Virus record (IMG/VR): IMGVR_UViG_3300023174_000045 | Coordinates: 62,001 to 126,000 of that record | DNA length: 64,000 nucleotides | Reading direction: 5' to 3' (one strand) | Shown here: positions 1,810-64,000 of the stretch, piece by piece | How positions within the stretch are numbered: the stretch's first letter is position 1 | Layout of the letters: each line of letters begins with the position of its first letter | The notes under the pieces: model-generated | Database searches by the model: none | What the model saw: the letters and a program-made list of their open reading frames with translations, nothing else | What the model was told of the DNA's origin: nothing | Position numbers and translations under genes: made by a program

Positions 1810-2056
1810 TGATGCGTTTGAAAACATGACAGCAGACTTGATGAACATGGCCGAAGGAGTAGAACGTCAGCACAGCATTACTGAAGCAGCCTACGAGGCT
1901 TGGCGACTGGAATTCACGTTTGATGGCATTCGAGGTCTTAGATACGGACAGAGTTTTTGCAATCATTTCGACATAACAGATTACGTGCTGTTTTACAAAA
2001 TGGACTGGGAAAGTGCTGATCAACACATAAGGACAGTGTATCTTGTACAGCCCTGA
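1802..2056 (+). CDS. hypothetical protein
   Basis: ORF with AGGA SD. Confidence 0.65.
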   Translation: MGNDAFENMTADLMNMAEGVERQHSITEAAYEAWRLEFTFDGIRGLRYGQSFCNHFDITDYVLFYKMDWESADQHIRTVYLVQP

Positions 2057-2270
2057 ACACACACATGGCCTGACCCTGCACTGGGCTCGGGACGACTACA
2101 TGGAACTGTGGAACATGCGCATGGCCAACATAGTAGAACTGTTTGGCCTGCCCGGTGACAGATACATCACAGAAATCACCCAAGATTACATGACCTTTTG
2201 GTTCCGTGATCACCGCGATGCCTTGCTATTTCGACTATGCCATGGACACAGTGAACTACGTACGGCTTGA
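2043..2270 (+). CDS. small hypothetical protein (FxF...DA..F.L family)
   Basis: C-terminal MTFWFRDHRDALLFRL motif shared with other small ORFs; start uncertain. Confidence 0.6.
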   Translation: MYSPEHTHGLTLHWARDDYMELWNMRMANIVELFGLPGDRYITEITQDYMTFWFRDHRDALLFRLCHGHSELRTA

Positions 2271-2469
2271 TTGTGGTTCTCAACAGGCCTTGGCCTACAA
2301 GCATCAACTGGATGCAGACGGACTTGTAGTGAATCAAGACTATGTCTGGCGCTATCAAAAGCCGGTGTATGATGAATTTGCCTGGACCGAATCAGAAGTC
2401 AGCCACGTCACATTCACATTCCGAAATCCCGCACTGGCCACATTCTATCAGTTAAAGTGGAGTAAATAA
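2206..2469 (+). CDS. small hypothetical protein (same family)
   Basis: C-terminal VTFTFRNPALATFYQLKW; start uncertain. Confidence 0.6.
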   Translation: MITAMPCYFDYAMDTVNYVRLDCGSQQALAYKHQLDADGLVVNQDYVWRYQKPVYDEFAWTESEVSHVTFTFRNPALATFYQLKWSK

Positions 2470-2473
2470 TTTA

Positions 2474-3085
2474 ATGTACAAACACCAACTCACTACACCA
2501 GACTGGTTGTGCCATCCAGCTAATATTTCTCCCGACCTTGTTCCAGCCTTAAGCAAAGAATTACTTGCACTTTATCACCATGTTGCAAATTCTGATGGAG
2601 TGTTAAATTTACCCGGTTTTTTGGTTTCTAATGAAACCGAAGAATTTCATAATAGCACCTGTCCAACTGTTATGTCTATGTTGGCACAACTAAAGATACG
2701 AGATTTTTTTCAACATTTTTGTTTTATCATCGAAGTCGCTGATCAGAATTCGGAGGTGCATGTTGACACTTTTTTTGATTTTGGACTCAATATTCCAATA
2801 TTAAATTGTCATGATAGTTATACTGTATGGTATGACAGTGAACCAGTTGGAAAAAATGTCAGCACAGGATATCAACTTAATTTTAAGTTAAATGTTGTAT
2901 CATGCCAAACTGAGGACATGAAAGAAATTGGTCGTTGTGATGCAAATGTCCCACATTGGATCAATGTCAATGTACCACATCGCCCAGTGGTCATGCATGA
3001 TAAATTAAGAATCAATGCCAGCTTGAGATTCAGCAATGATTTATTAATAGATAAACAGTTACCTTATTGGGTATATACAAAATGA
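2474..3085 (+). CDS. hypothetical protein, possible cupin/2OG-Fe(II) oxygenase-like fold
   Basis: HVD motif, distal His (VPHRP) and RINASLR; AT-rich. Confidence 0.45.
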   Translation: MYKHQLTTPDWLCHPANISPDLVPALSKELLALYHHVANSDGVLNLPGFLVSNETEEFHNSTCPTVMSMLAQLKIRDFFQHFCFIIEVADQNSEVHVDTFFDFGLNIPILNCHDSYTVWYDSEPVGKNVSTGYQLNFKLNVVSCQTEDMKEIGRCDANVPHWINVNVPHRPVVMHDKLRINASLRFSNDLLIDKQLPYWVYTK

Positions 3086-3879
3086 TTCGCGGTCTTATTG
3101 TAATCATTTTATTTTTTTATATCGGAACTGTGCATGGTCGTGAGCCCAGTGTTTACGTTTACAACGAAACCGCGGACCGTGTGGAATACCAACGCAACTC
3201 AACGGAGTATCGTCCCATAGCCAGTATCACCAAGTTAATGACTGCCATGGTGGCCTTGGACCACAGCAAGGACCTATTCCGTCAACTGCCACTCAACACC
3301 ACTGTCAAAAGCAACTTGCCACGTGGCACATACACACGCCAAGAACTGTTCAATGCCATGCTGGTACGTAGTGACAATGCTGCCGCGGAAACACTGGCCA
3401 ATGATTACCCAGGCGGACGTAAAGAGTTTATTTGGAAGATGAATCAACAGGCCCGAGAGTGGGGCATCAATGCTGTGTTTCGTGATCCCACAGGCTTGGA
3501 TCGCGGCAACATGGCCACTGCTGGTGACATAGGAACCATGGCTAGTTACGCCGCGGGATACTGGGTCATACGTGATGCCAGTGTGAAAAAAACAGTGGCA
3601 TTTGAAACCAAATTCAAAAAGAAACTGCGTAAAATTCAACTCAACAATACCAACCGTCCCATCTTGATAGAGTTTGACAACATCATCACTTCAAAAACAG
3701 GATTTACCAATCCAGCAGGTTACTGTGTTGCCCTGGTGGTAGAACATCAAAAGCAACGCAGAGTGATAGTTGTGTTGGGTGAGAAAAACAAAACACGCAG
3801 AATAGACACAGTACAGGACATCATGTACAATCATGTGCTGGATCAAAATTTGCAGGACACCCGGTACATCAATAACTAA
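3082..3879 (+). CDS. D-alanyl-D-alanine carboxy/endopeptidase (peptidase S11, PBP7-like)
   Basis: Signal peptide; SxxK (ASITKLM), SxN (SDN) and KTG (SKTGFT) motifs in order. Confidence 0.9.
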   Translation: MIRGLIVIILFFYIGTVHGREPSVYVYNETADRVEYQRNSTEYRPIASITKLMTAMVALDHSKDLFRQLPLNTTVKSNLPRGTYTRQELFNAMLVRSDNAAAETLANDYPGGRKEFIWKMNQQAREWGINAVFRDPTGLDRGNMATAGDIGTMASYAAGYWVIRDASVKKTVAFETKFKKKLRKIQLNNTNRPILIEFDNIITSKTGFTNPAGYCVALVVEHQKQRRVIVVLGEKNKTRRIDTVQDIMYNHVLDQNLQDTRYINN

Positions 3880-4121
3880 TGTTGATGCAACTGCAACAAC
3901 CCATCGGCTCCATACGTCTCGGCGAAAGTTTCAATCACGCACGGGAAATTGCTAGACCTTTTGGGCAAATTGATCGAATCATAGAGTGGTGCAAAACCGA
4001 ACTTGTGGGCGACTGGCGTTGGCAGGTAGTGGCCACCAGCTCAGACCGTGCTCCGGGACGCTACATTTTCTACTTTGACTCAGACCGTGACGCTGCCGCG
4101 TTTGCACTGTTCTGGGCATAA
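3879..4121 (+). CDS. small hypothetical protein (same family as 2043)
   Basis: C-terminal YIFYFDSDRDAAAFALFW. Confidence 0.65.
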   Translation: MLMQLQQPIGSIRLGESFNHAREIARPFGQIDRIIEWCKTELVGDWRWQVVATSSDRAPGRYIFYFDSDRDAAAFALFWA

Positions 4122-4142
4122 AAAACTAATACTTTTTACTAC

Positions 4143-4171
4143 TTGACTAGATATTCCTGATCTGCTATACT
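4143..4171 (+). promoter_or_regulatory. sigma70-type early promoter
   Basis: TTGACT-N17-TATACT. Confidence 0.75.
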
Positions 4172-4198
4172 ACGGGTATTGTATTGCAAAGGATTGAC

Positions 4199-4435
4199 AT
4201 GAATGACTGGGACCGTAACAACCTGCATTTCATCTTGGATTCAGATGAGGCCACGCTAGAGGACTTTTATAGTTGGGCCACAGAAGATGACTTGACCTAT
4301 GCCTTGAGTCTTGTGCGGCAAGCCAAAACAGAATTACTGATACAAGAAGCCGACATCTTGGACGAAATCTTGACCAATGCCACAGCAGATGATGTGTCAG
4401 ATGCTGCCACCATGTTAAAGCAATTTCAACTATGA
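4199..4435 (+). CDS. hypothetical acidic protein
   Basis: ATG at 4199 after AAAGGA. Confidence 0.7.
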   Translation: MNDWDRNNLHFILDSDEATLEDFYSWATEDDLTYALSLVRQAKTELLIQEADILDEILTNATADDVSDAATMLKQFQL

Positions 4436-4764
4436 GTCATCAGTTTTTGATCATGTGGTGCAATGAAGGCCTTGAGTGTTGCATAGATCTCACTGAGGAT
4501 GAGCAACGGCGCATGTGGCAACAGTTAAAGGGCGAGCCGGTGAGTGAGAGTGCGATTCCCAACTACAATCATCTCCTGCTACGTGCTAGATACAACAGTC
4601 AACGCCACTATGAGATCTACACTTGTGAAGCCACAGATGGCATCACTGCTGAGGATATCAAGGAAATGTTTGAAGCCAGTCCGCAGACTGCGGCTGACAC
4701 GATTCGACGCCTGGGTCACCGCATTCACAGTGACCGGGCCACAAACAAGGTGTTGATCACCTAA
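4432..4764 (+). CDS. hypothetical protein
   Basis: ATGA-coupled ORF. Confidence 0.7.
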   Translation: MSHQFLIMWCNEGLECCIDLTEDEQRRMWQQLKGEPVSESAIPNYNHLLLRARYNSQRHYEIYTCEATDGITAEDIKEMFEASPQTAADTIRRLGHRIHSDRATNKVLIT

Positions 4765-4988
4765 CTGGACGTTCCGGGTGTCTCCGGATACTGTGACCCA
4801 CAGGATGAGAAGTACAATGACATGTACGGGTGGTACACTTCGAACCGAAAGTGCGCTGGCAATGCGAGAACGGACCCTGTCGGGAAGCGGGTGGAAGGTG
4901 TGTGTTACAAGGCATTGAACCAAACGGGGAGCCAAAGTAACAACGGTGCGAGCTGACACACTAAATTACCGCCGGGGGTTGCAGAGCA
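4765..4988 (+). ncRNA. candidate structured ncRNA, class unknown
   Basis: GC-rich intergenic segment with multiple nested helices, 5'/3' long-range pairing and a possible pseudoknot (see findings). Confidence 0.55.
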
Positions 4989-4994
4989 TTTTGG

Positions 4995-5023
4995 TTGACA
5001 CAAATGAATTTTTGTGTTATATT
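4995..5023 (+). promoter_or_regulatory. sigma70-type promoter
   Basis: TTGACA-N17-TATATT with TG extension. Confidence 0.7.
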
Positions 5024-5078
5024 ATGAGCGTCTTGTTTAAGTTATAGGACAAACTCATTTTTTTAAAGGAAACAAATC

Positions 5079-6248
5079 ATGGCAACAACAGTAGCAACTC
5101 GCACAGTAAATCGCGGAGCAAATCCCTTTGCACCCATTGTCAAACAACAAAATCAACGTTTGACTCCCACTCACAACAACAGTGTATATCAGCCCATCAC
5201 ACAACGTGCTGGCGCCATACACAACAATCCTGCAATACAACAAGCACTAAAAATCCTTGCCGCCAACATGGCCGGGCAGAAATTTTCCAATGCTCATTGT
5301 GGAGAACTGGTATTAGTACCATTCCACTTGTTGGACATCAATATTGAAATTCAACGCGATGCTGAACCTGAACATCAGGCCAAAATCATTGTGCGTTTTG
5401 ATCCACGCATTTACATGCCTGTGATGGCTACCAAGTTAGCCAATGGTAGATACTCAGCGTGGGAGGGTCAGCAAACTGCTTGTACCTTGTATCACTTGTA
5501 TCAAGCTGGACTGTTAGAAGATGATTTCTTGGTCCAAGTCAAATGCTTTGACGAAACACTCACAGTACCGGGTTCTGCACTGGTAGGCGAAGCAGATGGC
5601 AATTATGGTTTCCGTCAAATCAATGGCGGCATGCGCAAACCCATTGATGCATTCCACTTGCACCGCAGTCGTGTCAACGGCGCTCGTTTATACAATTCTG
5701 TGTTTGACGAAGACGTACAAAGTGAAATGATTCAGTGTGTGCTGGAACGCAACAACATGTTTCCAGCCAAGTCCAGTGCGGCCAAGTACAACCAAGCCAC
5801 TCCAGGCATGGTCACTTACATTCATGGTTTGAATTTGATTGCTGGACATGGCACTGACATGAAGAAATTCAACGAAACCATCAAAGACCTAGAGTGGGCA
5901 CTGAAGTGGCACAACACCTACTTCCCCAATGAAAAGGGCGTGGATGGTGGTTTTATTCTTGCATTTGGTCGACTGCACGCCGCGGCACGTACCAACAAGC
6001 CTGAGATCAAATTGGATCATGCTGTGGAACTGGACCTGTACAAATTGTTCCAACACAAATACGGCAGTCCCAAGAGCTTCCACAATGACTGCAAACAACG
6101 CTGGGGTACATTCACTGCTGCCAACAACATGCCTGAATCTTGGAGCGACGGTTGCTTGACTCCCATCTTGGTCATGGACTATATAAACTGGGGCGGGCAG
6201 TGTGCTTTGCCGCAAGTGCCACACATGACAACTTACGCAGGTATCTAA
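5079..6248 (+). CDS. ParB/Srx-superfamily (DGQHR-like) domain protein
   Basis: IQRD...FDP...GRYSAWEGQQT resembles the ParB-like QR...DGQHR pattern. Confidence 0.5.
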   Translation: MATTVATRTVNRGANPFAPIVKQQNQRLTPTHNNSVYQPITQRAGAIHNNPAIQQALKILAANMAGQKFSNAHCGELVLVPFHLLDINIEIQRDAEPEHQAKIIVRFDPRIYMPVMATKLANGRYSAWEGQQTACTLYHLYQAGLLEDDFLVQVKCFDETLTVPGSALVGEADGNYGFRQINGGMRKPIDAFHLHRSRVNGARLYNSVFDEDVQSEMIQCVLERNNMFPAKSSAAKYNQATPGMVTYIHGLNLIAGHGTDMKKFNETIKDLEWALKWHNTYFPNEKGVDGGFILAFGRLHAAARTNKPEIKLDHAVELDLYKLFQHKYGSPKSFHNDCKQRWGTFTAANNMPESWSDGCLTPILVMDYINWGGQCALPQVPHMTTYAGI

Positions 6249-16854: not shown

Positions 16855-19551
16855 ACAAACACACTGATCAGCCATGGTCATTTCAAAGTTGATCTTGTTG
16901 TAATCCACTGAGTAGAATCCATTGGCTTCCAATGTGACTGCGTGAGCAAATTGTGGCTGTTGCAACAAGTCTTGCGCCATGACTCCTGTCCATGTAATAT
17001 CACTCCAGACGTAATTAAAGTTGTAGATCTTTAATCCGTCATCTCGTGTTTGAATCAATTCAATATGATATTTCAGTCTACGATCTGAATAAGCAGAACC
17101 TGCTGAGCTTCCGCCGGCACTTGATGCGCCACTACCATTGCCAGCAGAACTGCCAGCTGATCCTACACCGCCGCTGTTTTTGTTATGCACAATCATGTTG
17201 TTTGCAACATACGTGTGATTGCCGTCAAGAACAAAATTGTAAAGCTGAGTGTCAGGATCTTCGGCATGTTCAGACATGGTGTTTATTGCAATTCCTATTC
17301 CGTCGGCAGTTTCAATTATGTCGCCAACTGACAATTTACCAATATTCCAATCTTGAAATAGTTCATATTTTGCTCGAGTTGCATCTGGGTTGGCTGATTT
17401 CCACTCACCATCTTTGCAATACACAGGATGATCATTGGTCATAAAAGCACTGCTTCCATTGATGGAAACAAGAGTTCTATTGCCCAGTACAGGTCTAATA
17501 TACGCAACAACTGTGTTTGAAACGCTGTCTTTGCCTAGTACTGTTTCTCCAATGCTGACATTTTCAATTGCTTTGCATGATCCATCGGCCATGGTTATTT
17601 GTGTGCCGGCTACAAAACAGCTAATACGCACACTGTCATATACCTTGGGCGGTGGTGGTGGCGCTGCTCTACGGTCCGACGGTCTTGATAATCTTCCAAA
17701 ATCATCAGTTTGTCCGGTGAAGTTTAATGCTGCACCACCAATCAACATTTGCCATGAATTATTGTAATATACATAGGTAGCTGTGGTTTGTTTCCAGGTA
17801 CCATTTACATAGACAAACGCATTCTTGACATCGTGCCAGGCACTGTCAACTGCATCATCTCTAATTTGAGTACCATACGCATCAAAAACTATTACAGCCG
17901 CACCATGCCGTGCTTGCAATTGACCTGCTGATGCTCCGGTGCCTGCCGATCCCACCAAAGAATAATATTGAGAATTTGCTCCAGCAGAAGCAATGCCAGT
18001 GGAATCAATTACCATGCCACCAATGGTAGCAGGTTCATTTCTGTAGCTAATGCCTACCGAGCCAGCTTGTGCATAACTGTCGCCCACACTGCTGTAACCA
18101 TTATTGCCGGCACCACCAGGTCCACCAGGTCCACCAGCACCACCTCCGCCACCGTCTTTGTAGAAGTCACCTTGATTTTGACCAACTTGGCCACTGCTAA
18201 TACCTCCCGCGGTTTGTCCACGCGGCCCGGGGGCATTTGATTCTGATCGACCAGTGGTGCTGTTGCCAGCACCACCACCACCTGCTCCGCCCACGGCCAC
18301 GGCCAACAATGTTTCATTTGTGGTTTTGGGATTCAGCACCAGTGTGGTGCAACCTCCAGAACCGCCACCGCCACCAGAACTACCTTGTGGCCCAGCCAGA
18401 CCACCTGTGGCACCTGACCAGCTTTTGCTGATTACCAGAGCAATACCTGCCGCAGGCAGTGTGGTGTCAGTAAAACTGGCTGTAAATGACAAAGTATGAT
18501 ACCCTTGGTTCACATAGACGTCTGTGACATAAGCAGTGGCGTATGAATCAGTGCCAGGAGTGGTGGCCACCACGGTGCCGTCAATGCTGACAGTGGCTGA
18601 GTTGGCAGCGGCCAGTTGTATTTGGTATATTCCATAATAGGGAAAATAGATATTGTTATAGGTACGAGAACACGATGCCGCTTTGATGTCTTGTTCCCAT
18701 ACCCCATGATCCACTATCAAATTACTGTAGGTTTGAAAAGAAGCGGCTGCTGGAGCAACTGGCGTATACAAAGGTGGACTGGCTGTGGTGGTCCTACTGT
18801 CAAATATTTGTCTTACCAGTCCACTACCACCCAATCCTGCGTTACCAGCAGCAGCTATGGTGAGCCCTACCCCAAAAGTTCCATAAGTTGCTCCAGGATT
18901 GGCTGTGGCAGTGATGCGTATGGTATGCTGTCCGGGTGTTATGGTACGTACAAAGTCCACGCCTGTGCTAACTTGATTGTTCCAACTGTCCAGACCAGAT
19001 TCAATGAATACTTCGCCATCAAGATACACTGTGGCCTGATAATAGGCAGCCAATGTAAACACATAGTTGATAGAATACTGAAACCACACTGTATATGATT
19101 GATCAAAGGTCAAAGTGTTGGCCTGACTGGTCACGCTGCCATTAAACGATGTGCCAGTATTCCATACACCAGTGTCATTTAAAAATTTTGACCATTTGGC
19201 AACATAGGTATTGCTGGCTCGAGGCAGTGTGGTACTACCTGGGCTGTTTGGCACAGCAGTGCGAGTGTTAAAAATGGGTGTTAGATAAGCATTTGCTGGT
19301 GTGCTGTTGACCCCACTGCTGCCAGCAGACCCCACTGTGACTTCAATGGTGTCCCCAGGAACTGCGGTAAACTCTGCTCGAACATAGCCCCCACCAGATC
19401 CTGTGCCTCCGCGATTCTGTCCGTCACTGCCGCCAGCGCCGCCGCCAGCGCCCCACAAGTAAGCAGTCACAGTGGGTGCGTAACCAATGGACGGAAAAGT
19501 TAAAAGTTGACGTGTTTGGGTATTGCCCAACGGTCTAGTTAATGTTGTCAT
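16846..19551 (-). CDS. Gly-rich tail fibre/virion protein with C-terminal Hint domain and S74 intramolecular chaperone domain
   Basis: LWGAGGG Gly-rich regions; CFVAGT...T.DHP...LYNF...HTY.AN..IVHN; YSDRRLK...GVMAQD...VDY. Confidence 0.8.
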
Positions 19552-28522: not shown

Positions 28523-28759
28523 ATGGAACATCCGCTGATAGGCTCACTTGAAGAATTAACGCTGGAAGAACTTGGCGCCAAAGTCAACGAACTGGGCAAA
28601 AAATTGGGCATTGCGGCCCGAACAGGAAATGGACATTTGTGTAATCAAATACGCATGGCCATGGAAAACTATCAAAACATGTATCAAACCAAATTGCAAG
28701 AGAGCTACAAAAAGGCTCAGGACGACAACAACTTTGATGACAAGATCAACATCCAATGA
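28523..28759 (+). CDS. hypothetical protein
   Basis: ORF after promoter. Confidence 0.7.
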   Translation: MEHPLIGSLEELTLEELGAKVNELGKKLGIAARTGNGHLCNQIRMAMENYQNMYQTKLQESYKKAQDDNNFDDKINIQ

Positions 28760-29355
28760 ACGTTAGACTACAATACGACTTAGAATTCATGGCTGGCATC
28801 TACTACGATGACCGACTGCAACTAAACAGTTATTCAGTTAATCTGGGCTTGTTGACCAAGACTACAGACGCTGCCAGCACCAACATTGCCATGGACCGAC
28901 TCAAGTACTTTGTGCATGGCGAACTAGCCAACACTGTGTTTGTGAATCAAGATTCACAAGAACGTGCTGAAATGATGCAGATAATGGGTATCAATGTCAC
29001 GACCTTGCCTGAAGAACCAGTAGACCAAATTGTGGGCATGATGTTATACTACAAGCTCAATGCCATCATGGAAGGGCGCATGACTGTGACCAGATTGGAT
29101 TTAAGCAGTATACTAGGTGATTCAGTTTGGTATCAACACGACGAAGATGATGCCTGGGGGCCTTTCCGTGAGGATGGATGGTGGCATGCGCCCACGGTAC
29201 AACATGACAGTATTTTAGAATCTGTCACAGCCGACAATGTAGTGCGTGTGATACCCAATGCCTGGCACGAGCTGGGATTGATTTGGCCCGAAGAGGAAAC
29301 TGAACCCACTGCCAACACTGTGGTGTTTGCCAACTTCACAAAAAATGAGAACTGA
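28756..29355 (+). CDS. hypothetical protein
   Basis: ATGA-coupled 199-aa ORF. Confidence 0.75.
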   Translation: MNVRLQYDLEFMAGIYYDDRLQLNSYSVNLGLLTKTTDAASTNIAMDRLKYFVHGELANTVFVNQDSQERAEMMQIMGINVTTLPEEPVDQIVGMMLYYKLNAIMEGRMTVTRLDLSSILGDSVWYQHDEDDAWGPFREDGWWHAPTVQHDSILESVTADNVVRVIPNAWHELGLIWPEEETEPTANTVVFANFTKNEN

Positions 29356-29857
29356 TCAATACGGACAAATGATCTACAACGAAGACGATCTTGTGGACAT
29401 GATCATGCGTGGTATCACTTTGGATCATTTGTCCGCGGTCATTGTGGAACCTGGAGTGAGCTTGGAACGTGCCAGTGCATACTTGCAACAGGTTCCCGAA
29501 CTGGTAGAATATGCATTCACTGTGATGCCAGTGGAGGAATTTGATCAGTTCAAACAAAACATCTGGCACATGCCCGAAGAATACCGACAACTAGACATTG
29601 CTGAATATATTTTGAGCCTGTGTGATTCAGACGCCAAACTGCAACGATGTGGTCAAGAACTGTTGTTGTTTCAAGAACGCAACTTGTTTGACCTGTTGCG
29701 TTATCTCAAATATCTTGTGGATACCATGCGCAGTCACAACATGATTTGGGGTGTAGGGCGTGGCAGTTCAGTGGCCAGCTATGTGTTGTATCTATTGGGA
29801 GTACACAGAATTGATTCAATTTACTACGATTTAGAACCCACTGAGTTCTTGCGTTAA
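29345..29857 (+). CDS. stand-alone fragment of DNA polymerase III alpha (DnaE)
   Basis: R...EL......YL.YLVD.MR...I.WGVGRGSSVASYVLYLLGVHRID.I.YDL...FL matches the DnaE GRGS region; only 170 aa. Confidence 0.8.
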   Translation: MRTDQYGQMIYNEDDLVDMIMRGITLDHLSAVIVEPGVSLERASAYLQQVPELVEYAFTVMPVEEFDQFKQNIWHMPEEYRQLDIAEYILSLCDSDAKLQRCGQELLLFQERNLFDLLRYLKYLVDTMRSHNMIWGVGRGSSVASYVLYLLGVHRIDSIYYDLEPTEFLR

Positions 29858-29878
29858 ATAATATTTTAGGAGAAAGAA

Positions 29879-30106
29879 ATGACCAAAGATGTATACAAAA
29901 GTTCTAGAGGCAAAGCCGTGGACATGGGCGCACTGCGTTTAAAAAACGAAAATGAACGTGCAGTAGGCAACATGAAAGTCAATGCTCGTGGAGATGCTGT
30001 AGATGATAAAAATGTTGCAATTCAAAGCAAGCCACAACAGGCACACAAACAGTATCAACAGCAGGTTCAGGCAAAAACAACATCACACAAATGGGATCTA
30101 GACTAA
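29879..30106 (+). CDS. hypothetical protein
   Basis: After TAAATA (29855) and AGGAG. Confidence 0.75.
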   Translation: MTKDVYKSSRGKAVDMGALRLKNENERAVGNMKVNARGDAVDDKNVAIQSKPQQAHKQYQQQVQAKTTSHKWDLD

Positions 30107-30483
30107 TGAAGGCAGCATATTCAGCACACCGAGTCAGCAAATTACAAGCACTGAGTGATTCAGTCTTGGTAGAAGACATGACATTTGACGAACGCTTATC
30201 CAATGGCGGTATTGTGTTGTTGAACGACAATGGCAAGAGCTCAGGTATCCGTCCACGGTGGGGTCGGGTATATGCCATCGGACCTGCTCAGCAAGATGTG
30301 CGTGTAGGCGAGTGGATACTGGTGGCACACGGACGTTGGACACGAGGACTGGACATTGAAGATGATGCAGGCAAACGTACCATTCGTAAAATTGATCCCA
30401 AAGACATATTGATGAGTGCAGATGAACGCCCAGCTGATGTCACATTCTCTGATGCCATTCACGTGGAAAAGAAAGAACGATGA
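30106..30483 (+). CDS. co-chaperonin GroES family protein
   Basis: L.AL.D.VLV...GGIVL...GRVYAIGP...VRVGE.IL...DIL. Confidence 0.8.
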   Translation: MKAAYSAHRVSKLQALSDSVLVEDMTFDERLSNGGIVLLNDNGKSSGIRPRWGRVYAIGPAQQDVRVGEWILVAHGRWTRGLDIEDDAGKRTIRKIDPKDILMSADERPADVTFSDAIHVEKKER

Positions 30484-30713
30484 TCAAAAATTGGAATGTG
30501 AATCAGGTCATTGGCCAATGCCAACAGATGTATTTTGGTGCCACTGATCCACACATGACGGGCTTTGTCAATTGGCCTTGTAAACAAGACTTATATCGTG
30601 TAAAATTTGCTGTAGACGAAATGTTGGCAAAAACCAGCCGGTTCTCCGGAGAAGATGAATGGCTGTTGGAGCAAGAGCAACAACAGATGTGGAAAGTTTT
30701 AAAATCAAGGTAA
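30480..30713 (+). CDS. hypothetical protein
   Basis: Coupled ORF. Confidence 0.7.
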   Translation: MIKNWNVNQVIGQCQQMYFGATDPHMTGFVNWPCKQDLYRVKFAVDEMLAKTSRFSGEDEWLLEQEQQQMWKVLKSR

Positions 30714-30717
30714 CAAA

Positions 30718-31641
30718 ATGCAAGAGCTATGGGTAGAAAAATATCGTCCCCGAACAGTGGATGGTTATGTGTTTGTTGATCAAGCACAACGTGAACAAGT
30801 AGACAGTTGGATTCAAGCCAGATCAATTCCGCATTTGTTGTTGAGTGGTGCCGCCGGAACAGGTAAGACCACCTTGGCCAAGATGTTGATCAATGAGCTG
30901 GGCGTGGATGAATATGATGTCATGTACGTGAATGGGTCCAAGGAAGGCCGCAAAATTGAATGGGTCGACAAGCTGATTAGTTTTTGTCAAACCATGCCAT
31001 TTGGTGATTTCAAAGTGGTGCTGATTGACGAAGCTGATTACATGAACAATCATTCGGTGCAACCAGCCTTGCGCAACTTGATGGAAGATTATTCACGAAC
31101 TGTGCGATTCATAATGACTTGTAACTACCCGCACAAGATCATTGCACCATTGCACAGTAGATTGCAAGGTTTTCATATTACCAAAACAGATCACACTGAA
31201 TTCACAGCCCGGGCAGCCACGGTGTTGGTCACAGAAAATATACAATTTGATCTGGATGTGTTAGATACCTATGTCAAAGCCACCTATCCCGACTTGAGAA
31301 AATGTTTGAATTTGTTGCAACAAAACAGCACCAATGGCACGTTGATTGCTCCTGGTGCCACAGACAAAAGCGCAGGTGACTGGAAGCTGGACTGTGTGGA
31401 TTTGTTCAAACGTGGTCAAACTAGACAGGCTCGAGCACTGATTTGTCAAAGCAGTGCGCCGGAGGAATCTGAAGACGTATTTCGTTGGATGTATGATAAT
31501 TTAGAACTGTGGGGTAAAACTCCCGAACGCCAAGATCAAGCAATCATGATCATACGGCAAGGCCTAGTAAATCACAACTCGGTTGCTGACGCAGAGATCA
31601 ACTTGAGTGCAACCATTGTGGAATTGTGTAACATCGAATGA
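30718..31641 (+). CDS. sliding clamp loader AAA+ subunit (RFC small/T4 gp44-like)
   Basis: LWVEKYRP, GAAGTGKTT, LIDEADY, CNYPHKII.PL.SR. Confidence 0.93.
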   Translation: MQELWVEKYRPRTVDGYVFVDQAQREQVDSWIQARSIPHLLLSGAAGTGKTTLAKMLINELGVDEYDVMYVNGSKEGRKIEWVDKLISFCQTMPFGDFKVVLIDEADYMNNHSVQPALRNLMEDYSRTVRFIMTCNYPHKIIAPLHSRLQGFHITKTDHTEFTARAATVLVTENIQFDLDVLDTYVKATYPDLRKCLNLLQQNSTNGTLIAPGATDKSAGDWKLDCVDLFKRGQTRQARALICQSSAPEESEDVFRWMYDNLELWGKTPERQDQAIMIIRQGLVNHNSVADAEINLSATIVELCNIE

Positions 31642-31919
31642 GATATTTACTTTTAACTTACTACAAAAAGCCTGATGGCAAAATTGACGAAGTCATGGCC
31701 GTGGCCAAGAACTTGAAAATGCGTGATCATCAAACTTGCAATGTGATTTTGGACTTTAAGAAATTACAAGTGATCAAAGCCAACATGTCAGGCACAGACG
31801 TACTAAAAGATTTTGACCGAATTGCGGGTTATTATCATCAACACTATGCTTCTACCATTGAACGTTTGTTCAAAGAAAATGGCTACGAAGTTGAAGTAAA
31901 TCCCGAAGTTCAGGGATAA
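31638..31919 (+). CDS. hypothetical protein
   Basis: Coupled ORF. Confidence 0.7.
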   Translation: MRYLLLTYYKKPDGKIDEVMAVAKNLKMRDHQTCNVILDFKKLQVIKANMSGTDVLKDFDRIAGYYHQHYASTIERLFKENGYEVEVNPEVQG

Positions 31920-33904
31920 GTTAATTTTCTAAAGAAATCAACCAACTGCTCAATACTTTGTTGATTTTGTTCGGTATGATTTGAAAAGAATCCTTTTCTT
32001 GGTTTCAAGAAAAAAGCAATAGCAGGGTTTTCAAAATAAAATTTAAACACACTGTCAGCATGATACAATCCTGCTGACTTTGTCTTGACTGCGTCATTGA
32101 TCACAAAGCCCTGTTGATACAAGTCACTGTGTCGCACACGCACGTCTCCAAACACAATTTCATTTATTACCACAGTTTTGTCTCGAACAATCACGCCATT
32201 TTCCACAACAGTGTCATGCTGTGTTTTATTCTTCAAGTGAATTGACAGCATGTTGCGCTTTTTCAAGCCCGGTACTGTGATTTTTATAACTTGATTGTTT
32301 TCAACCACAACAGATTGTGCAACAATTTGTGAATTTATCATGATGTCAATTTCAGGCCAGTCGGTGCTACAAGTACCAGTTAATGAAATAGATATTGTCA
32401 TCGGCTCAGGATCAACTGGCAGTTGATAATTTTTTGACACAGTGTTGAACATGTCATTTTGCCATTCAACACTGTCACGGTTTTGCGGTGAAACAGATTT
32501 CAACGAAATCAGCAAACTAGACAATTCATACAGCACATTGTTTGCCGGCCATTTCAAACTTTCAATAACCTGCTGTGCCATGATACGTCTTCTGATACTT
32601 TCCACATAATCAACTGTGGTCACAAGGCTGGTCCATTGAGTGGCATTGTCTTGTTCTATTTTCCATATTTTGTTTTTTTCTTTGGCCAACGGCGTGTTGG
32701 GAAGAATTTGAAATCCACCGCCCAGGATCAATCCCACCAGGGTGCCATCAGCCACGTACTTGATGTATCGTTTGAACATGTCCAAGGTGTCCACAAAGTC
32801 CTGTTCAGTTTCTGTGGGATAGCCAATGATGATGTAAAAACTGCAAGTTATACCATGTTGACTGAATTGTTCCATTTCCAAGTCAAGGTCGTGGTTGGTA
32901 AAGCCTTTTTTCATGTGAGCTCTCACTGCATCACTGCCGGTTTCCACTCCAATGGTGAGATTGTGTGCGCCACTGGCCTTGATCAGTTGATAGTAATTTT
33001 TAGGCAGTCCTTGTTGTTTTCTAGATATCCATTGGCCGCCCCAGGTAAAGTCAGCGCCAGTGGCCTGTTTGTAATCAGCTAGAGTCTGCATCATGATCAT
33101 GAGTTCTTTGACATTGCCATTGATCAAACTGTCAGTGAAAAAGTAATTCTTTATGCCAGTCTGAGCATGCATGTCAATGATGTCTTGTGCAATCTTTGCC
33201 CCTGATCGAGACTTGAATTTTGGCCAAAAATGTGCAACGTCACAGAACGAACAACTTCTTACACAGCCGCGACTGCCTGTGATTTGCACAGTGATGCCAT
33301 CATAAAAATTGTCATAATCTTTCAATCTGTGATAATCGCTGTAGTCAGGTGGACCCAATGCGTCCAAGTCTTGAATTTGCTCCCCAGCACAATTAATGCC
33401 CGGGTAGGACATGTTTCCAGATAGTAAATTTTCCAAGGCCAATTCGCCTTCGCCGTAGATGGCCACATCAGCAAGGTGTTTGACTTGTTCAAAGAATTTT
33501 TCAGTTACACCATGGCCGCCCAACAGTATTCGGGATTCTGGCAATTTCTTTTTGACCACATATGGCAACAAATCACGACAAAATTTCCTACTGTCTTTGG
33601 TAAAAACACTTATGCCATACCATCGACTGTTGGTGTTGACCAAATCTCTGGACAGGTATTCCAGCACATTGTTGTACACTGCTTGGTCTTGTTGGGACAA
33701 TACCACAGCATCTTCCAACCAGTAGTTGATCAGTCTAGACATCAATTCAGCATCGTTGATGGCCAATTTGGTTTCTAAATTGTATTCTTTGGTAGTGACC
33801 CGATATCCTTGACTTTGCAAATGCCCTTTGAGCACCGCTGGCGCTGCCGGCGGCAGGTTGGTGGGAATGTAGGGTATGGAAACTACACAGAGATCAAAGG
33901 TCAT
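31910..33904 (-). CDS. B12-binding-domain radical SAM protein
   Basis: LLGG..GEGE; GSRGCVRSCSFC (CxxxCxxC); GVETGS; IIGYPTET. Confidence 0.88.
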   Translation of the reverse strand: MTFDLCVVSIPYIPTNLPPAAPAVLKGHLQSQGYRVTTKEYNLETKLAINDAELMSRLINYWLEDAVVLSQQDQAVYNNVLEYLSRDLVNTNSRWYGISVFTKDSRKFCRDLLPYVVKKKLPESRILLGGHGVTEKFFEQVKHLADVAIYGEGELALENLLSGNMSYPGINCAGEQIQDLDALGPPDYSDYHRLKDYDNFYDGITVQITGSRGCVRSCSFCDVAHFWPKFKSRSGAKIAQDIIDMHAQTGIKNYFFTDSLINGNVKELMIMMQTLADYKQATGADFTWGGQWISRKQQGLPKNYYQLIKASGAHNLTIGVETGSDAVRAHMKKGFTNHDLDLEMEQFSQHGITCSFYIIIGYPTETEQDFVDTLDMFKRYIKYVADGTLVGLILGGGFQILPNTPLAKEKNKIWKIEQDNATQWTSLVTTVDYVESIRRRIMAQQVIESLKWPANNVLYELSSLLISLKSVSPQNRDSVEWQNDMFNTVSKNYQLPVDPEPMTISISLTGTCSTDWPEIDIMINSQIVAQSVVVENNQVIKITVPGLKKRNMLSIHLKNKTQHDTVVENGVIVRDKTVVINEIVFGDVRVRHSDLYQQGFVINDAVKTKSAGLYHADSVFKFYFENPAIAFFLKPRKGFFSNHTEQNQQSIEQLVDFFRKLTYP

Positions 33905-56104: not shown

Positions 56105-57229
56105 ATGAATTTATACGACCTGTTCAACGAAGAAAAAGTGCGCCTTGACCCCAAGTGCTGGAAGGGCAAAAAGATTGGCAATCCCAAGACCAAGATGAAG
56201 GGCGGCGTGCGTGTAAACAACTGTGTGCCTGCTGAGAGCATAGCAGAAAATGCCGGGCAACCACTCACAGTTCAACAATTGGCCGCCATCAGTGATGAGG
56301 CCTTGGATCAAGCATATGGGTATGGACGTAGTACACCCAGCAACAACTTTGGCTGGCAAGCCAATTTGAAGTCAGCTGCCTATGCCAAGCAAATGATTGA
56401 TCAGGGTGTGACAGACATTGAAGCCATCAGTGATGCTATTCACAAAGGATGGAACACTACTGCACAGGCATTTGTACAAGATCCTGAACAGTTTGATGAC
56501 ACAGCAAAACTGGCAGCAGCCGGCAAACTAGAAGCCAAACTTCAACAGCGAGCACAGTTGATGAAACAAAATTATGCTCAGTTACCTGAAGAAGAAAAAG
56601 AAAAAGACCGTGTGGTTGCACGAGCACTGTTACAGGCCATTCGTGGATCACAACAACCAGATGTGGCAGAAGGCGTGATGTACGGTGCAGAAAACTTGCA
56701 CGTAGGCGACGATGTGATCATTAGTGGCGATGTCAATCTCAAAGGTGCCACTGGCGTGATTGACAGCTTTGGCCAAGACAAACGTTTTGTTGTTGTCAAC
56801 CTGTACAATCATGGCAAGCACAGTTTCCACTCTAGTGATGTCAGCATCAACGACCATGATAATGATGAACACGATGACGATGTACTGGATGAAAAGTCTG
56901 TGAGCCAAGCACAGTTCCGTACCATGGCAGCGGCTGCACACAATCCCAAGTTTGCCAAGAAAGTTGGCATCAGTCAAGATGTTGCCAAAGAGTTTCACTC
57001 AGCAGACAAGCACAGCAATTACAAAAAGTTACCAGATCGTACCACTGAAGGCGAGCAACAAAAGGGTGCAGACTATCGTGACCCTAAGGAAGTTGACTAC
57101 GATGACGAATACGATGCCATGGTTGCCAGAGTTAAAAAGTTAGCCGGACTGGGCCCTATGCGAACTGTGTACGATCCCGCCAAGCGACAATATCGCAACA
57201 TGCCCACAGCAGTGCAGCCTAAAAAATGA
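56105..57229 (+). CDS. mosaic protein with RyR-like and KOW-like modules
   Basis: CWKG...NCVP module; AIHKGW...YAQLPEEEKEKDR; VGDDVIISG..KGATGVI. Confidence 0.65.
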   Translation: MNLYDLFNEEKVRLDPKCWKGKKIGNPKTKMKGGVRVNNCVPAESIAENAGQPLTVQQLAAISDEALDQAYGYGRSTPSNNFGWQANLKSAAYAKQMIDQGVTDIEAISDAIHKGWNTTAQAFVQDPEQFDDTAKLAAAGKLEAKLQQRAQLMKQNYAQLPEEEKEKDRVVARALLQAIRGSQQPDVAEGVMYGAENLHVGDDVIISGDVNLKGATGVIDSFGQDKRFVVVNLYNHGKHSFHSSDVSINDHDNDEHDDDVLDEKSVSQAQFRTMAAAAHNPKFAKKVGISQDVAKEFHSADKHSNYKKLPDRTTEGEQQKGADYRDPKEVDYDDEYDAMVARVKKLAGLGPMRTVYDPAKRQYRNMPTAVQPKK

Positions 57230-62600: not shown

Positions 62601-63056
62601 CCGCAAAGCCCTGAAGAAATTAGAAAAGCCAAACAATCAGCTGCTGCTCTTGCTGCACAACAGGCCATGGGAGATGTTGCTTCACCAGCACCTGCACCTA
62701 CTGTGGCGTCTACCCCGGCTCCAGCATCATCTGCCGCGCCTTCGGGTCCTCCTGGATTCAATGCTGGCAACTTGGCACAACTTCCCGGTATGGCACAATA
62801 CATGCAACAAAAGCCGGCTGCGGCCAAACCTGCACCCAATTTTGCTCGAGGACCTGCTGCATATGGAAAGACCACAATGAATGTTGGACCAACTGCAACC
62901 AAACCAACAGCCACAGCAGCACCAGCTGGCAAAAAGCCCACTGCACAACAGCAACAAGAATATTATAAATCTTTGGGATTGGCAGAGTCTCTGACCTGGA
63001 GCCAAAATTTTGATCCTGGACGCAGTCTGTATCGTAGAATGAAACAGGATATTTAA
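59613..63056 (+). CDS. large modular protein with hydrophobic central segment and Pro/Ala-rich tail
   Basis: 1147 aa; QGVSE, QGVNE, GLNE, QLNE, GLAE linkers. Confidence 0.7.
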   Translation: MITSDLFTNNSSALFENTGPVTHRVGLTVTDPNHPMVSKRGETIQKTVRVKGDDREKAINGAIAHLRRKGYKVHDHHYIGTVDQGVSEGQLELNTPDPVVVVQDQQGKILDKINLSVAAQKYKLGQPQNIKNQLAHQNYTKIGSYTIVSPMSGQPQDQTTTGQKTTFATPGVVEDMPHGQDINDPLDPSYGGNRNRSVKQNIQARLGHDERGDARERAGQPRSTHARHKPQLPESSMDDDAIWRQYGQYNAQDLMQEFPNLNPKDAQTIVNYAEYGWSSSNPQKFRNEVVQRVKMAMGQQGVNEVSLGDYRKKAQLSQAGAKINKFFDRDDPAAVAAADQTIAKREKGLARADARIKPYTPPAQDAEKHQRDLTAKYPNIDELVAAAEQRRDPNYDYAEGDAYYRGREAEQNYQKLKQIQRVIQGLNESCAAVKKNYLYEGLDRDSVNTVKLWESAGQRIVEAQLTVDQINQLFKSAEQDATAAGGNRTMVGKGKDAAVAVNRAWEDLKTKVQNSGPIKSVDAAYDSAAEKLKQATGGDQGVMKYVQKYRDFAKAHPVAQSLIYSALIAAAGISGAGVGGAAALGLFKLVDKLLQGEKFSSAAYSGAKTGAMAYGASKVADYFRGPQTPQGGGGLDPKDPDVAAFRRDVADMRGYDNYMTKNPTSSLSPEQYAAKIGKASALTPDGSGLTSQASMMNNIASKMGLPPGAHQATFQGGVPVTIDGKAVPLNLLSGDQQRNIEAARAMRQAMSGSQSLAQKAAAAAAAADKTYESLNVHTSHKLTDADLYFIFSAATQLNEGIWDSIKGTAGKAAGKAADWAKTQGTNLTTKVTADKLKSAWLKAGSPTDSDQVYNVMTQAGVAPQILDTVYKTMGVPTFKEKALARPTTPAFSSAPIPAGPASKSAAAAGSAPATTTPASPEVTPNAATPATADAPKTKQLGTGTGRINPATGRPWTPSELKAKYAQPQSTAPTPDSEPPAPELTSPEPALKSSPTAPQSPEEIRKAKQSAAALAAQQAMGDVASPAPAPTVASTPAPASSAAPSGPPGFNAGNLAQLPGMAQYMQQKPAAAKPAPNFARGPAAYGKTTMNVGPTATKPTATAAPAGKKPTAQQQQEYYKSLGLAESLTWSQNFDPGRSLYRRMKQDI

Positions 63057-63526: not shown

Positions 63527-64000
63527 ATGAGTTATATTGACGCACTATTTGATCGTGAACACGATCGCATTCATGTTGTAGAACGCCGCGACGGCAAACG
63601 GCAGTATCGAGAGTATCCTGCCAATTATGTGTTCTACTACGACGACCCCCGAGGCAAGTTCCAAAGTATCTACGGCACGCCAGTGTCAAGGTTCAGTACC
63701 CGCAACAACAAAGAATTCCGCAAGGAAGTCCGAGCACAAAGCGGGCGACAGATCTACGAATCGGACATAAATCCCATATTCCGTTGCTTTGAAGAAAACT
63801 ACCGAGACCAAGACGCCCCCACATTACACACAGCATTTTTTGACATTGAAGTTGCTTTTGATGCTGTGCGTGGATTCTCGCCTGTGGAGGATCCTTTCAA
63901 TCCCATCACTGCTATATCGGTATATCTGGATTGGCTGGAGCAACTTGTGACACTTGTTGTGGCACCACGCCACATGAGTGCAGAGACTGCTCGTGAGATC
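63527..64000 (+). CDS. family B DNA polymerase, N-terminal part (runs off window)
   Basis: MSYIDALFDRE...YESDINP...AFFDIEV (ExoI motif)...NPITAISV; open to the window end; GGAG SD. Confidence 0.85.
   Translation, partial: MSYIDALFDREHDRIHVVERRDGKRQYREYPANYVFYYDDPRGKFQSIYGTPVSRFSTRNNKEFRKEVRAQSGRQIYESDINPIFRCFEENYRDQDAPTLHTAFFDIEVAFDAVRGFSPVEDPFNPITAISVYLDWLEQLVTLVVAPRHMSAETAREI

What the first reader, a model, noticed from the sequence alone, without database searches (positions are those of the whole stretch)
29345..29857. Stand-alone 170-aa DnaE fragment in a phage that also encodes PolB
Seen: an intact coupled ORF with the DnaE GRGS motif, ending at PTEFLR, which corresponds to FERFL just before the catalytic PDID motif; no intein residues follow. 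A family B polymerase starts at 63527. Inference: either one subunit of a naturally split, intein-less C-family polymerase whose catalytic part lies outside this window, or a repurposed fragment that interferes with the host replisome.
Basis: partly seen in the sequence, partly recalled or inferred. Interest (0 to 1): 0.6.

Follow-up and report, generated by a model that had tools for sequence, protein, structure and literature searches.

The report
N-half of split mini Pol III
This 170-residue gene of an uncultured freshwater jumbo phage is the nucleotide-binding half of a stripped-down, two-gene version of the bacterial replicative DNA polymerase; this split enzyme was described from sequence alone in 2021, and its catalytic half lies 91 kb away, at the cut end of the same contig.

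Summary
Window 29345-29857 (+) is an intact 170-aa ORF. Its residues 62-170 are the first half of the DnaE palm (E. coli 271-393), with GRGS, and it ends at EFLR just before the catalytic PDxD.

It is not an orphan fragment. It matches phrog_11127 end to end (E 3e-43). At least 8000 metagenomic protein clusters are relatives; all 155 inspected end at the same EFL. dN/dS is about 0.15.

The same phages carry a second, distant gene of about 190 aa (phrog_11778). It begins with DxDxD and holds the third catalytic Asp and finger motifs. In this genome only its last 71 residues remain, at the contig start.

Genus counts of the two genes match in isolate phages. A cognate pair from a relative co-folds with ipSAE 0.89, against 0.10 for the best control.

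Iyer et al. 2021 (Viruses 13:63) described exactly this: a minimal Pol III alpha in group 2.2 jumbo phages, split into two distantly encoded proteins, beside a family B polymerase.

Its activity and role are untested. One side observation: a Clostridium phage has a full-size DnaE cut at the same site by an HNH endonuclease gene.

The parts
29345..29857 (+). Gene for the N-terminal (NTP-binding) unit of the split minimal Pol III alpha: 170 aa plus TAA stop (P0001)
   Evidence: ORF. phrog_11127 E 3e-43 over its full length. PF07733 E 5e-7. Structural match to the first half of the DnaE palm, Z 9-11. dN/dS 0.15-0.17 against relatives.
29345..29527 (+). Phage-specific N-terminal extension (residues 1-61). 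It is variable, modelled with low confidence, and not matched to DnaE. In the co-fold of a relative, parts of it touch the partner.
   Evidence: pLDDT 47-68. No structural match before residue 62. Chain-1 residues 3, 6-9, 19 and 33-36 lie in the predicted interface. Variable in alignments A2 and A6.
29756..29767 (+). GRGS motif (residues 138-141). This is the G[GS] triphosphate-binding motif of the pol-beta-like nucleotidyltransferase fold (role taken from established knowledge of the fold).
   Evidence: Read directly from the sequence. Present in 155 of 155 homologues. Invariant in A2, A4 and A6. The strand around it pairs with the partner's DxDxD strand in the co-fold.
29843..29857 (+). C-terminal boundary: EFLR plus the stop. 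It corresponds to FERFL of DnaE, a few residues before the catalytic PDxD.
   Evidence: All 155 homologues end in EFL plus one residue. The profile alignment ends on Taq FERFLN at residue 455. The model ends at E. coli residue 393.
29879..30106 (+). Context: conserved small neighbour (phrog_14844, 75 aa) of unknown function. It is not a DnaE remainder, although it lies in the same frame.
   Evidence: phrog_14844 E 4e-7. Alignment A1. The same position in PA5oct, Phosso, GAP32, XacN1 and Atu_ph07.
30091..30483 (+). Context: GroES / T4 gp31-like co-chaperonin, part of the conserved block.
   Evidence: phrog_931 E 5e-14 and Cpn10 E 2e-4.
30718..31641 (+). Context: gp44 / RFC-like clamp-loader large subunit, part of the conserved block.
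   Evidence: phrog_168 E 2e-75, plus AAA and DNA_pol3_delta2.
63527..64000 (+). Context: start of the family B DNA polymerase (911-aa frame that runs out of the window).
   Evidence: PF00136, 104 bits.

Best explanation
The ORF encodes the N-terminal unit of a two-subunit, minimal C-family (Pol III alpha-like) nucleotidyltransferase typical of T4-like 'group 2.2' jumbo phages.

Shown by sequence and models: the N-unit is the first half of the DnaE palm. It has helices plus the strand that carries GRGS, and it stops just before the catalytic aspartates. A separate gene of about 190 aa elsewhere in the genome encodes the C-unit. That protein starts with the DxDxD strand, has only about 60 residues where DnaE has its roughly 150-residue thumb region, then carries the K-x-D strand with the third catalytic Asp and a shortened finger with the RPxK and K-S-H-like motifs.

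Inferred: the two proteins assemble in trans. The GRGS strand pairs with the DxDxD strand and completes the palm sheet and the dNTP/Mg2+ site. The N-unit's phage-specific N-terminal 60 residues probably help to clasp the partner. The heterodimer is probably an active auxiliary DNA polymerase that works beside the phage's family B replicase, in repair, gap filling or synthesis of one strand, as Iyer et al. proposed. It lacks PHP, clamp-binding, OB and tau-binding parts, so it is unlikely to be processive alone.

My confidence by step: about 0.95 that this is the N-unit, about 0.8 that the two units pair, and about 0.5 that the pair is a templated DNA polymerase.
For: Family identity: phrog_11127 full length, E 3e-43. 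PF07733 above its cut-off. Structural match to DnaE 271-393, Z 9-11.

Conservation: at least 8000 clusters of relatives. All 155 inspected end at EFL and all have GRGS. dN/dS 0.13-0.24.

Partner: phrog_11778 genes start with DxDxD in Phosso, XacN1, PA5oct and G003. 116 of 120 homologues start this way. D6, D8, D10, K69, D71, R138, P139, K141 and H171 are invariant in 67 sequences. The C-unit model's residues 71-190 align to Taq Pol III alpha 620-836 (Z 8.4) and E. coli 557-779 (Z 7.3); the next unrelated hit has Z 2.8.

Own genome: the partner's last 71 residues sit at the contig start, next to the same converging gene as in relative G003.

Co-occurrence: genus counts in isolate phages are equal: Escherichia 34/34, Pseudomonas 11/11, Salmonella 8/8, Erwinia 8/8, Xanthomonas 4/4, Yersinia 4/4 and Agrobacterium 2/2, with Klebsiella at 10/11. 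Both 100%-complete IMG/VR genomes chosen for having the C-unit also have the N-unit.

Co-fold of the cognate G003 pair: ipSAE 0.89 against a best control of 0.10. That mark was reached by 58 of 80 solved complexes and 2 of 110 mismatched pairs, roughly, since my own alignments were used. Runs agree in at least 94% of contacts and the partner's pLDDT is at least 86. N-unit residues 135-148 touch C-unit residues 4-12.

Literature: Iyer et al. 2021 describe this split minimal Pol III alpha in group 2.2 phages.
Against: No experiment exists for binding or activity. I found none in the 2021 paper or in a 2026 review.

The co-fold used a relative whose N-unit is 48-49% identical to the window's, not the window's own pair. 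It may also score high from memory of intramolecular DnaE contacts.

In this genome the partner's N-terminal part, with DxDxD, is cut off by the contig end, so its intactness is not shown.

The C-unit's likeness to DnaE is weak by sequence. There is no PDB hit by profile, no Pfam hit for the G003 copy, and only a weak hhalign match.

With almost no thumb, a finger shortened by about 100 positions, and no clamp-binding or HhH domain, templated synthesis on duplex DNA is not assured.

A mirror-tree test of co-evolution was inconclusive (r 0.39, p about 0.10).
Confidence: 0.8

Rival explanations
1. The two units do assemble into a pol-beta-fold active site, but the enzyme is not a templated DNA polymerase. 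It could be a template-independent tailing enzyme, a primer-making or primer-extending enzyme, or a synthase of a nucleotide product.
For: The thumb is nearly absent: 61 residues lie between the DxD and the third Asp, against about 150 in E. coli DnaE by my recollection of its numbering. The finger lacks about 100 profile positions. No PHP, HhH, OB or clamp-binding parts occur in this record or in five complete relatives. The pol-beta-like superfamily holds many non-polymerase transferases (established knowledge).
Against: The retained motifs (GRGS, DxDxD, K-x-D, RPxK, K-S-H-like) are specifically those of C-family polymerases. The nearest structures are only DnaE and PolC. The N-unit gene sits in a conserved block with the clamp loader.
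Confidence: 0.13
2. A stand-alone DnaE mimic that the phage uses to interfere with the host replisome.
For: The protein lacks catalytic aspartates of its own, and phages are known to target host replication.
Against: It co-occurs strictly with a C-unit that carries the missing catalytic residues. Its invariant residues lie on the strand and helices that meet the partner. Hosts range from alpha- to gammaproteobacteria and unknown freshwater hosts, while the sequence is conserved by phage lineage. The part of DnaE retained is not, to my knowledge, a known binding site for beta, epsilon or tau.
Confidence: 0.03
3. A decaying remnant of a captured DnaE gene, or an assembly or frameshift artefact.
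For: It is only a third of the PF07733 domain, and the next ORF downstream is in the same frame.
Against: dN/dS is 0.13-0.24. The same end point occurs in 155 of 155 homologues at 30-97% identity. The downstream ORF belongs to an unrelated conserved family. Independent public assemblies show the same ORF and stop.
Confidence: 0.01

Closest known systems
Split minimal DNA polymerase III alpha of group 2.2 jumbo phages (Iyer, Anantharaman, Krishnan, Burroughs, Aravind 2021, Viruses 13:63; PMC7824862). PHROG families phrog_11127 (N-unit) and phrog_11778 (C-unit).
   Same: The N-unit carries the NTP-binding part. The C-unit carries the Mg2+- and template-binding parts. The two genes lie far apart, accompanied by a T4-like family B polymerase and an RFC-like clamp loader. 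The named relatives are the same (Atu_ph07 and Rak2-like phages).
   Different: Nothing essential. This copy comes from an uncultured freshwater phage, and only the tail of its C-unit is on the contig.
Bacterial replicative Pol III alpha (DnaE / PolC), e.g. E. coli DnaE (PDB 5FKU) and T. aquaticus Pol III alpha (2HPI, 4IQJ)
   Same: The pol-beta-like palm with GRGS, DxD and a third Asp, and the start of the fingers. Structural alignments give Z 9-11 for the N-unit and Z 7-8 for the C-unit.
   Different: About 360 aa in two chains instead of about 1160 in one. There is no PHP, the thumb is almost gone, the finger is shortened, and there is no HhH/beta-binding, OB or tau-binding domain.
Genes-in-pieces DnaE of Clostridium phage CS266P3 (OP172777.1); seen here, and I found no paper on it
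   Same: It is cut at the same place. The N piece ends just after the FERF(L/M)-like motif and the C piece starts M-DxDxDF. In Pfam PF07733 the boundary falls at positions 102|103.
   Different: It is full-size: PHP on the N piece, and finger plus HHH_6 on the C piece. The pieces are adjacent, separated only by an HNH (I-HmuI-like) endonuclease gene.
Intein-split DnaE of cyanobacteria (DnaE-n / DnaE-c, trans-splicing; from my own knowledge, not tested here)
   Same: A C-family polymerase encoded by two distant genes.
   Different: In cyanobacteria the halves carry split-intein parts and are spliced into one chain, and the split lies much further along the protein. Here no intein residues follow EFLR or precede DxDxD, so the halves must work as a non-covalent pair.

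Membership tests
Split minimal Pol III alpha of group 2.2 jumbo phages, N-unit (phrog_11127) | Stand-alone protein of about 170 aa that matches the family profile end to end | tested here: met
   phrog_11127 E 3e-43; residues 4-170 match profile positions 10-171 of 171
Split minimal Pol III alpha of group 2.2 jumbo phages, N-unit (phrog_11127) | Homology to the first half of the DnaE palm, including the GRGS NTP-binding motif | tested here: met
   PF07733 at 30 bits against a cut-off of 23.9. PDB profile hit on Taq 381-455. VIA-align Z 9.2-10.9. GRGS at residues 138-141.
Split minimal Pol III alpha of group 2.2 jumbo phages, N-unit (phrog_11127) | Ends at the FERFL-equivalent, before the catalytic DxD, with no intein | tested here: met
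   EFLR then the stop. 155 of 155 homologues end alike. No Pfam hit downstream.
Split minimal Pol III alpha of group 2.2 jumbo phages, N-unit (phrog_11127) | A C-unit gene (phrog_11778: DxDxD start, third Asp, finger motifs) elsewhere in the same genome | tested here: inconclusive
   Present, but cut: only the last 71 residues (RPGK and KKSHA motifs) remain at G000:C1:3-218, E 6e-15, with synteny to relative G003. The DxDxD end is lost to the contig end. Complete in relatives.
Split minimal Pol III alpha of group 2.2 jumbo phages, N-unit (phrog_11127) | Genome of the T4-like type, with a family B polymerase and an RFC-like clamp loader | tested here: met
   PolB 911-aa frame. gp44-like clamp loader at 30718-31641.
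Split minimal Pol III alpha of group 2.2 jumbo phages, N-unit (phrog_11127) | The two units bind and together have polymerase activity | not testable with these tools
   Prediction only: ipSAE 0.89 against a best control of 0.10 for the pair of relative G003. I found no published assay.
Canonical replicative Pol III alpha (DnaE/PolC) | Single chain with an N-terminal PHP domain | tested here: not met
   No PHP in this record (the record is 65% complete) or in five complete relatives.
Canonical replicative Pol III alpha (DnaE/PolC) | Full thumb and fingers plus HhH/beta-binding and OB domains | tested here: not met
   A full-length DnaE profile (phrog_405) matches only positions 340-437, 580-693 and 776-809 in relatives, and 388-434 and 775-809 here.
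Intein-split DnaE | Split-intein halves flanking the break | tested here: not met
   The N-unit ends at EFLR. The C-units start with M plus 0-6 residues and then DxDxD. No other domain was found.
Genes-in-pieces made by a homing endonuclease (as in CS266P3 DnaE) | The two pieces are adjacent, with an endonuclease gene between them | tested here: not met
   The halves lie 11 to 224 kb apart. The N-unit's downstream neighbours are phrog_14844 and a GroES-like gene.

The most novel reading that the evidence does not exclude
The roughly 360-aa heterodimer is a naturally minimised, self-sufficient C-family polymerase core. Either it gives these phages a true two-polymerase replisome (PolB plus mini-Pol III, each on one strand), or it carries out a non-canonical nucleotidyl transfer. 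The split itself arose by insertion of a homing endonuclease at the FERFL|PDxD codons, as still seen in Clostridium phage CS266P3, after which the halves drifted apart.
Probability: 0.2. Interest if true: 0.7.

Novelty: already known. Interest (0 to 1): 0.33.

Why it matters
On its own this copy is one more member of a published family, so it adds little. The family is still worth bench work. It would be the smallest known C-family polymerase core, it is made of two non-covalent chains, and it sits in phages that already have a family B replicase. Showing what it does would bear on how small a Pol III active site can be, on why some phages keep two polymerase families, and on the claim of Iyer et al. 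that it models an ancestral form of the bacterial replicase. The same-site split in a small Clostridium phage gives a concrete, testable route for how such a split can arise.

Tried and rejected
A third piece carrying the thumb or PHP. Full-length DnaE (phrog_405), PF07733, PF17657 and PF02811 scans of five complete relatives and of this record found only the two units. The Phosso hit at 170115 lies in a Cys-tRNA synthetase gene and is chance. A weak GAP32 hit (56579-56737, 13 bits, two stops) was not followed up.

The downstream in-frame ORF as a DnaE remainder: rejected. It belongs to phrog_14844, and read-through adds only about 2 bits.

A weak C-unit-like hit inside the window (18693-18842, E 0.0013, 58-aa frame): taken as chance.

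Plain Foldseek on the N-unit model gave only weak E-values (0.5-1.3), although its top nine hits were all DnaE. VIA-align settled the match.

A PDB profile search with the C-unit alignment found nothing. hhalign of the C-unit against the CS266P3 C piece aligned only the K-S-H region.

The mirror-tree (Mantel) test on seven genome pairs was inconclusive: r 0.39, p about 0.10, with distances saturated.

I tried to find the C-unit in the 360,714-bp JGI contig of a 79%-identical relative (P0255, L098). That record is not held for genome search.

The supplement of Iyer et al. is not held, so I could not match accession numbers.

The large representative-protein search was not used, because the word search and the family scans left nothing open.

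Full report
1. THE OBSERVATION

Window 29345-29857 (+) is an intact ORF of 170 codons ending in TAA. Its ATG overlaps the stop of the upstream 199-aa ORF by 11 nt, so the two are coupled.

Residues 138-141 are GRGS, and the protein ends in EFLR. Pfam PF07733 (DNA_pol3_alpha) matches residues 99-169 to profile positions 24-94 of 260, at E 5e-7 and above the curated cut-off. A profile of six family members aligns to T. aquaticus Pol III alpha 381-455 and ends on its FERFLN.

An AlphaFold2 model (mean pLDDT 75.6, over 90 for residues 80-130) aligns over residues 62/78-170 to E. coli DnaE 271/279-393 (Z 9.2, rmsd 2.7 A) and to M. tuberculosis DnaE1 307-413 (Z 10.9). This is the first half of the palm, which stops a few residues before the catalytic aspartates.

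Nothing intein-like follows. There are 21 nt with a GGAG, then a 75-aa ORF of an unrelated conserved family (phrog_14844) that happens to lie in the same frame.

A family B polymerase does start at 63527, in a 911-aa frame matching PF00136 with 104 bits.

Public assemblies from lake and river metagenomes of at least three studies carry the same ORF and stop.

2. IT IS A CONSERVED STAND-ALONE PROTEIN, NOT DEBRIS

The protein matches PHROG family phrog_11127 (171 positions) end to end at E 3e-43.

A tblastn search of 50,697 phage records finds it in about 96 jumbo phages: PA5oct-like, Rak2/GAP32/121Q-like, Atu_ph07, Phosso, XacN1, SCTP-2 and RsoM2USA. It also gives weak hits to ordinary full-length DnaE genes of Mycobacterium, Bacillus and Clostridium phages.

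The word search of metagenomic proteins reached its ceiling of 8000 clusters. Among the 155 sequences I retrieved:
- 127 are exactly 170 aa,
- all carry GRGS,
- all end in EFL plus one residue.

Pairwise dN/dS against three relatives of about 79% identity is 0.15-0.17.

The gene sits in a block kept across very distant lineages: N-unit, phrog_14844, a GroES/gp31-like gene, a small ORF, then the gp44-like clamp loader. In the window these are 29879-30106, 30091-30483, 30480-30713 and 30718-31641.

3. THE MISSING CATALYTIC PART EXISTS AS A SECOND GENE

Scanning five complete relatives with the DnaE finger model gave weak hits in ORFs of about 190 aa, far from the first gene. These belong to phrog_11778 (E 1e-73 to 1e-79). 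They also match a full-length DnaE profile (phrog_405) at positions 580-693 and 776-809, whereas the N-unit matches 340-437.

The C-unit proteins begin, after M and 0-6 residues, with DxDxD. In 67 diverse sequences the following are invariant: D6, D8, D10, K69, D71, R138, P139, K141 and H171. These are the DxD pair, the K-x-D strand with the third catalytic Asp, and the RPxK and K-S-H-like finger motifs of C-family polymerases. The equivalence to E. coli D401, D403 and D555 rests on my knowledge of DnaE plus the structural alignment below.

An AF2 model of the C-unit of relative G003 (pLDDT 81.6) aligns over residues 71-190 to Taq Pol III alpha 620-836 (Z 8.4) and E. coli DnaE 557-779 (Z 7.3). 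The top six hits are all C-family polymerases, and the next hit has Z 2.8.

What the enzyme lacks:
- Only 61 residues separate the DxD pair from the third Asp, so the thumb is essentially gone.
- About 100 finger positions are missing.
- No PHP domain and no third piece was found in this record or in the five complete relatives.

4. THIS GENOME

The window is positions 62001-126000 of a 225,080-bp IMG/VR record, estimated 65% complete.

The C-unit is present at contig positions 3-218 (E 6e-15), but only its last 71 residues, which carry the RPGK and KKSHA motifs. The contig end cuts off the rest. It is followed by the same converging 125-aa gene as in relative G003.

So the partner lies about 91 kb upstream of the finding and outside the window. 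Its DxDxD end cannot be checked here.

5. DO THE TWO BELONG TOGETHER?

Co-occurrence. Genus counts of records holding the two genes are almost all equal (N-unit/C-unit): Escherichia 34/34, Pseudomonas 11/11, Klebsiella 10/11, Salmonella 8/8, Erwinia 8/8, Xanthomonas 4/4, Yersinia 4/4, Agrobacterium 2/2. Both 100%-complete IMG/VR genomes that I picked for having a C-unit also have an N-unit.

Gene positions. The genes are never adjacent and lie 11 to 224 kb apart.

Co-fold. A relative's 293-kb contig (G003; its N-unit is 48-49% identical to the window's) holds both genes 62 kb apart. Its cognate pair gave ipSAE 0.89 in the median run, against 0.10 for the best of three controls. That mark was reached by 58 of 80 solved complexes and 2 of 110 mismatched pairs; these counts hold only roughly, because I supplied my own alignments. 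The runs agree in at least 94% of contacts, and the partner's pLDDT is at least 86. The strand around GRGS (N-unit residues 135-148) lies against the DxDxD strand (C-unit residues 4-12).

This supports binding but does not show it. The model may be recalling the intramolecular contacts of DnaE.

A mirror-tree test was inconclusive.

6. WHAT IS KNOWN

Iyer, Anantharaman, Krishnan, Burroughs and Aravind (Viruses 2021, 13:63; PMC7824862) wrote about group 2.2 jumbo phages. [quoted passage not shown] They suggest that it cooperates with the B-family enzyme in synthesis of one strand or in repair, and that it models an ancestral form.

That is exactly the system found here, in the same phage lineages.

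Genome papers simply label the N-unit "Pol III alpha". A 2026 review of jumbo phages does not mention it. I found no experimental work.

The finding is therefore a further, uncultured freshwater member of an already described kind.

7. MECHANISM

Shown: the anatomy of both units, their conservation, their co-occurrence, and the absence of all accessory DnaE domains.

Inferred:
- The units form a non-covalent heterodimer that rebuilds the pol-beta-like palm.
- The variable N-terminal 60 residues of the N-unit help to hold the partner. They appear in the predicted interface, but their own model confidence is low.
- The complex is catalytically active, because every catalytic residue is invariant.

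Whether it is a templated DNA polymerase is open, because there is almost no thumb and there are no clamp-binding or HhH parts. I put this at about one half, and at about 0.13 for some other nucleotidyl-transfer chemistry.

8. A SIDE OBSERVATION ON ORIGIN

In Clostridium phage CS266P3 (47.9 kb) a full-size DnaE is in two adjacent pieces, cut at the same place:
- The N piece has PHP plus PF07733 positions 2-102. It ends just after the FERF(L/M)-like motif.
- The C piece starts M-DxDxDF. It carries PF07733 positions 103-260, the finger and HHH_6.
- Between them lies an HNH endonuclease gene annotated I-HmuI.

This looks like a gene in pieces made by a homing endonuclease. It suggests, but does not show, how the jumbo-phage split began.

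9. VERDICT

The system is already known from comparative genomics but is untested at the bench. Interest is moderate to low for this copy, and higher for the family as an experimental target.

Noticed in passing
L102 (Clostridium phage CS266P3, OP172777.1): 2035-3243, 3465-3953, 4075-5601: A full-size DnaE is in two adjacent pieces, cut at the same FERF(L/M)|DxDxD site as the jumbo-phage mini enzyme. An HNH 'I-HmuI' endonuclease gene lies between the pieces. Sister phages CS266P1 and CS266P4 also gave hits. This may be a model for how the split arose.
   Followed up: partly
L103 and row H97 (Alishewanella phage vB_AspM_Slicko01, OQ508956.1, 141 kb): A phage well below jumbo size carries both the N-unit (79020-79532) and the C-unit (about 67582-68154), 11 kb apart. 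The split mini-Pol III is therefore not confined to genomes over 200 kb.
   Followed up: no
window 29879-30106 (+): A small conserved protein (phrog_14844) always follows the N-unit gene. Its N-terminal motif is conserved (S-x-RG-x-x-VD ... NARGD), its tail is variable and charged, and its function is unknown. Here it lies in the same frame as the N-unit, after two stops.
   Followed up: partly
window 29345-31641 (+): The gene order N-unit, phrog_14844, GroES/gp31-like, small ORF, gp44-like clamp loader is kept in PA5oct, Phosso, GAP32, XacN1, Atu_ph07 and uncultured relatives. A head-assembly co-chaperonin sits inside a replication block.
   Followed up: partly
window 31910-33904 (-): A 664-aa protein with a CxxxCxxC-type radical SAM signature converges on the clamp-loader block. 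The matching gene in relative L098 carries PF04055. Its role is unknown.
   Followed up: no
window 59613-63056 (+): A 1147-aa protein with a long Ala/Pro/Gln-rich, low-complexity C-terminal half lies just upstream of the PolB gene. It was not examined.
   Followed up: no
window 18693-18842 (+): A weak match (E 0.0013, 33% identity) of the Phosso C-unit's residues 44-92 falls in a 58-aa open frame. It is probably chance.
   Followed up: no
W03 = Cronobacter phage GAP32, NC_019401.1: 56579-56737: A weak PF07733 hit (13 bits, profile positions 174-226) lies in a frame with two TAG stops. It could be chance or a relic of the thumb region.
   Followed up: no
L007 (XacN1 118779-119372) and the Atu_ph07 paper (gp671): Some phages with the split mini-Pol III also have a gene annotated as Pol III epsilon-like exonuclease. 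In XacN1 it lies about 2.3 kb from the C-unit gene. It could be a proofreading partner.
   Followed up: no
window 28700-30800; runs X1-X20: The locus, or close strains of it, occurs in lake, river and freshwater metagenomes of several studies. A freshwater metatranscriptome library holds a 735-nt contig of a relative that spans the whole N-unit gene. That is not proof of transcription.
   Followed up: partly
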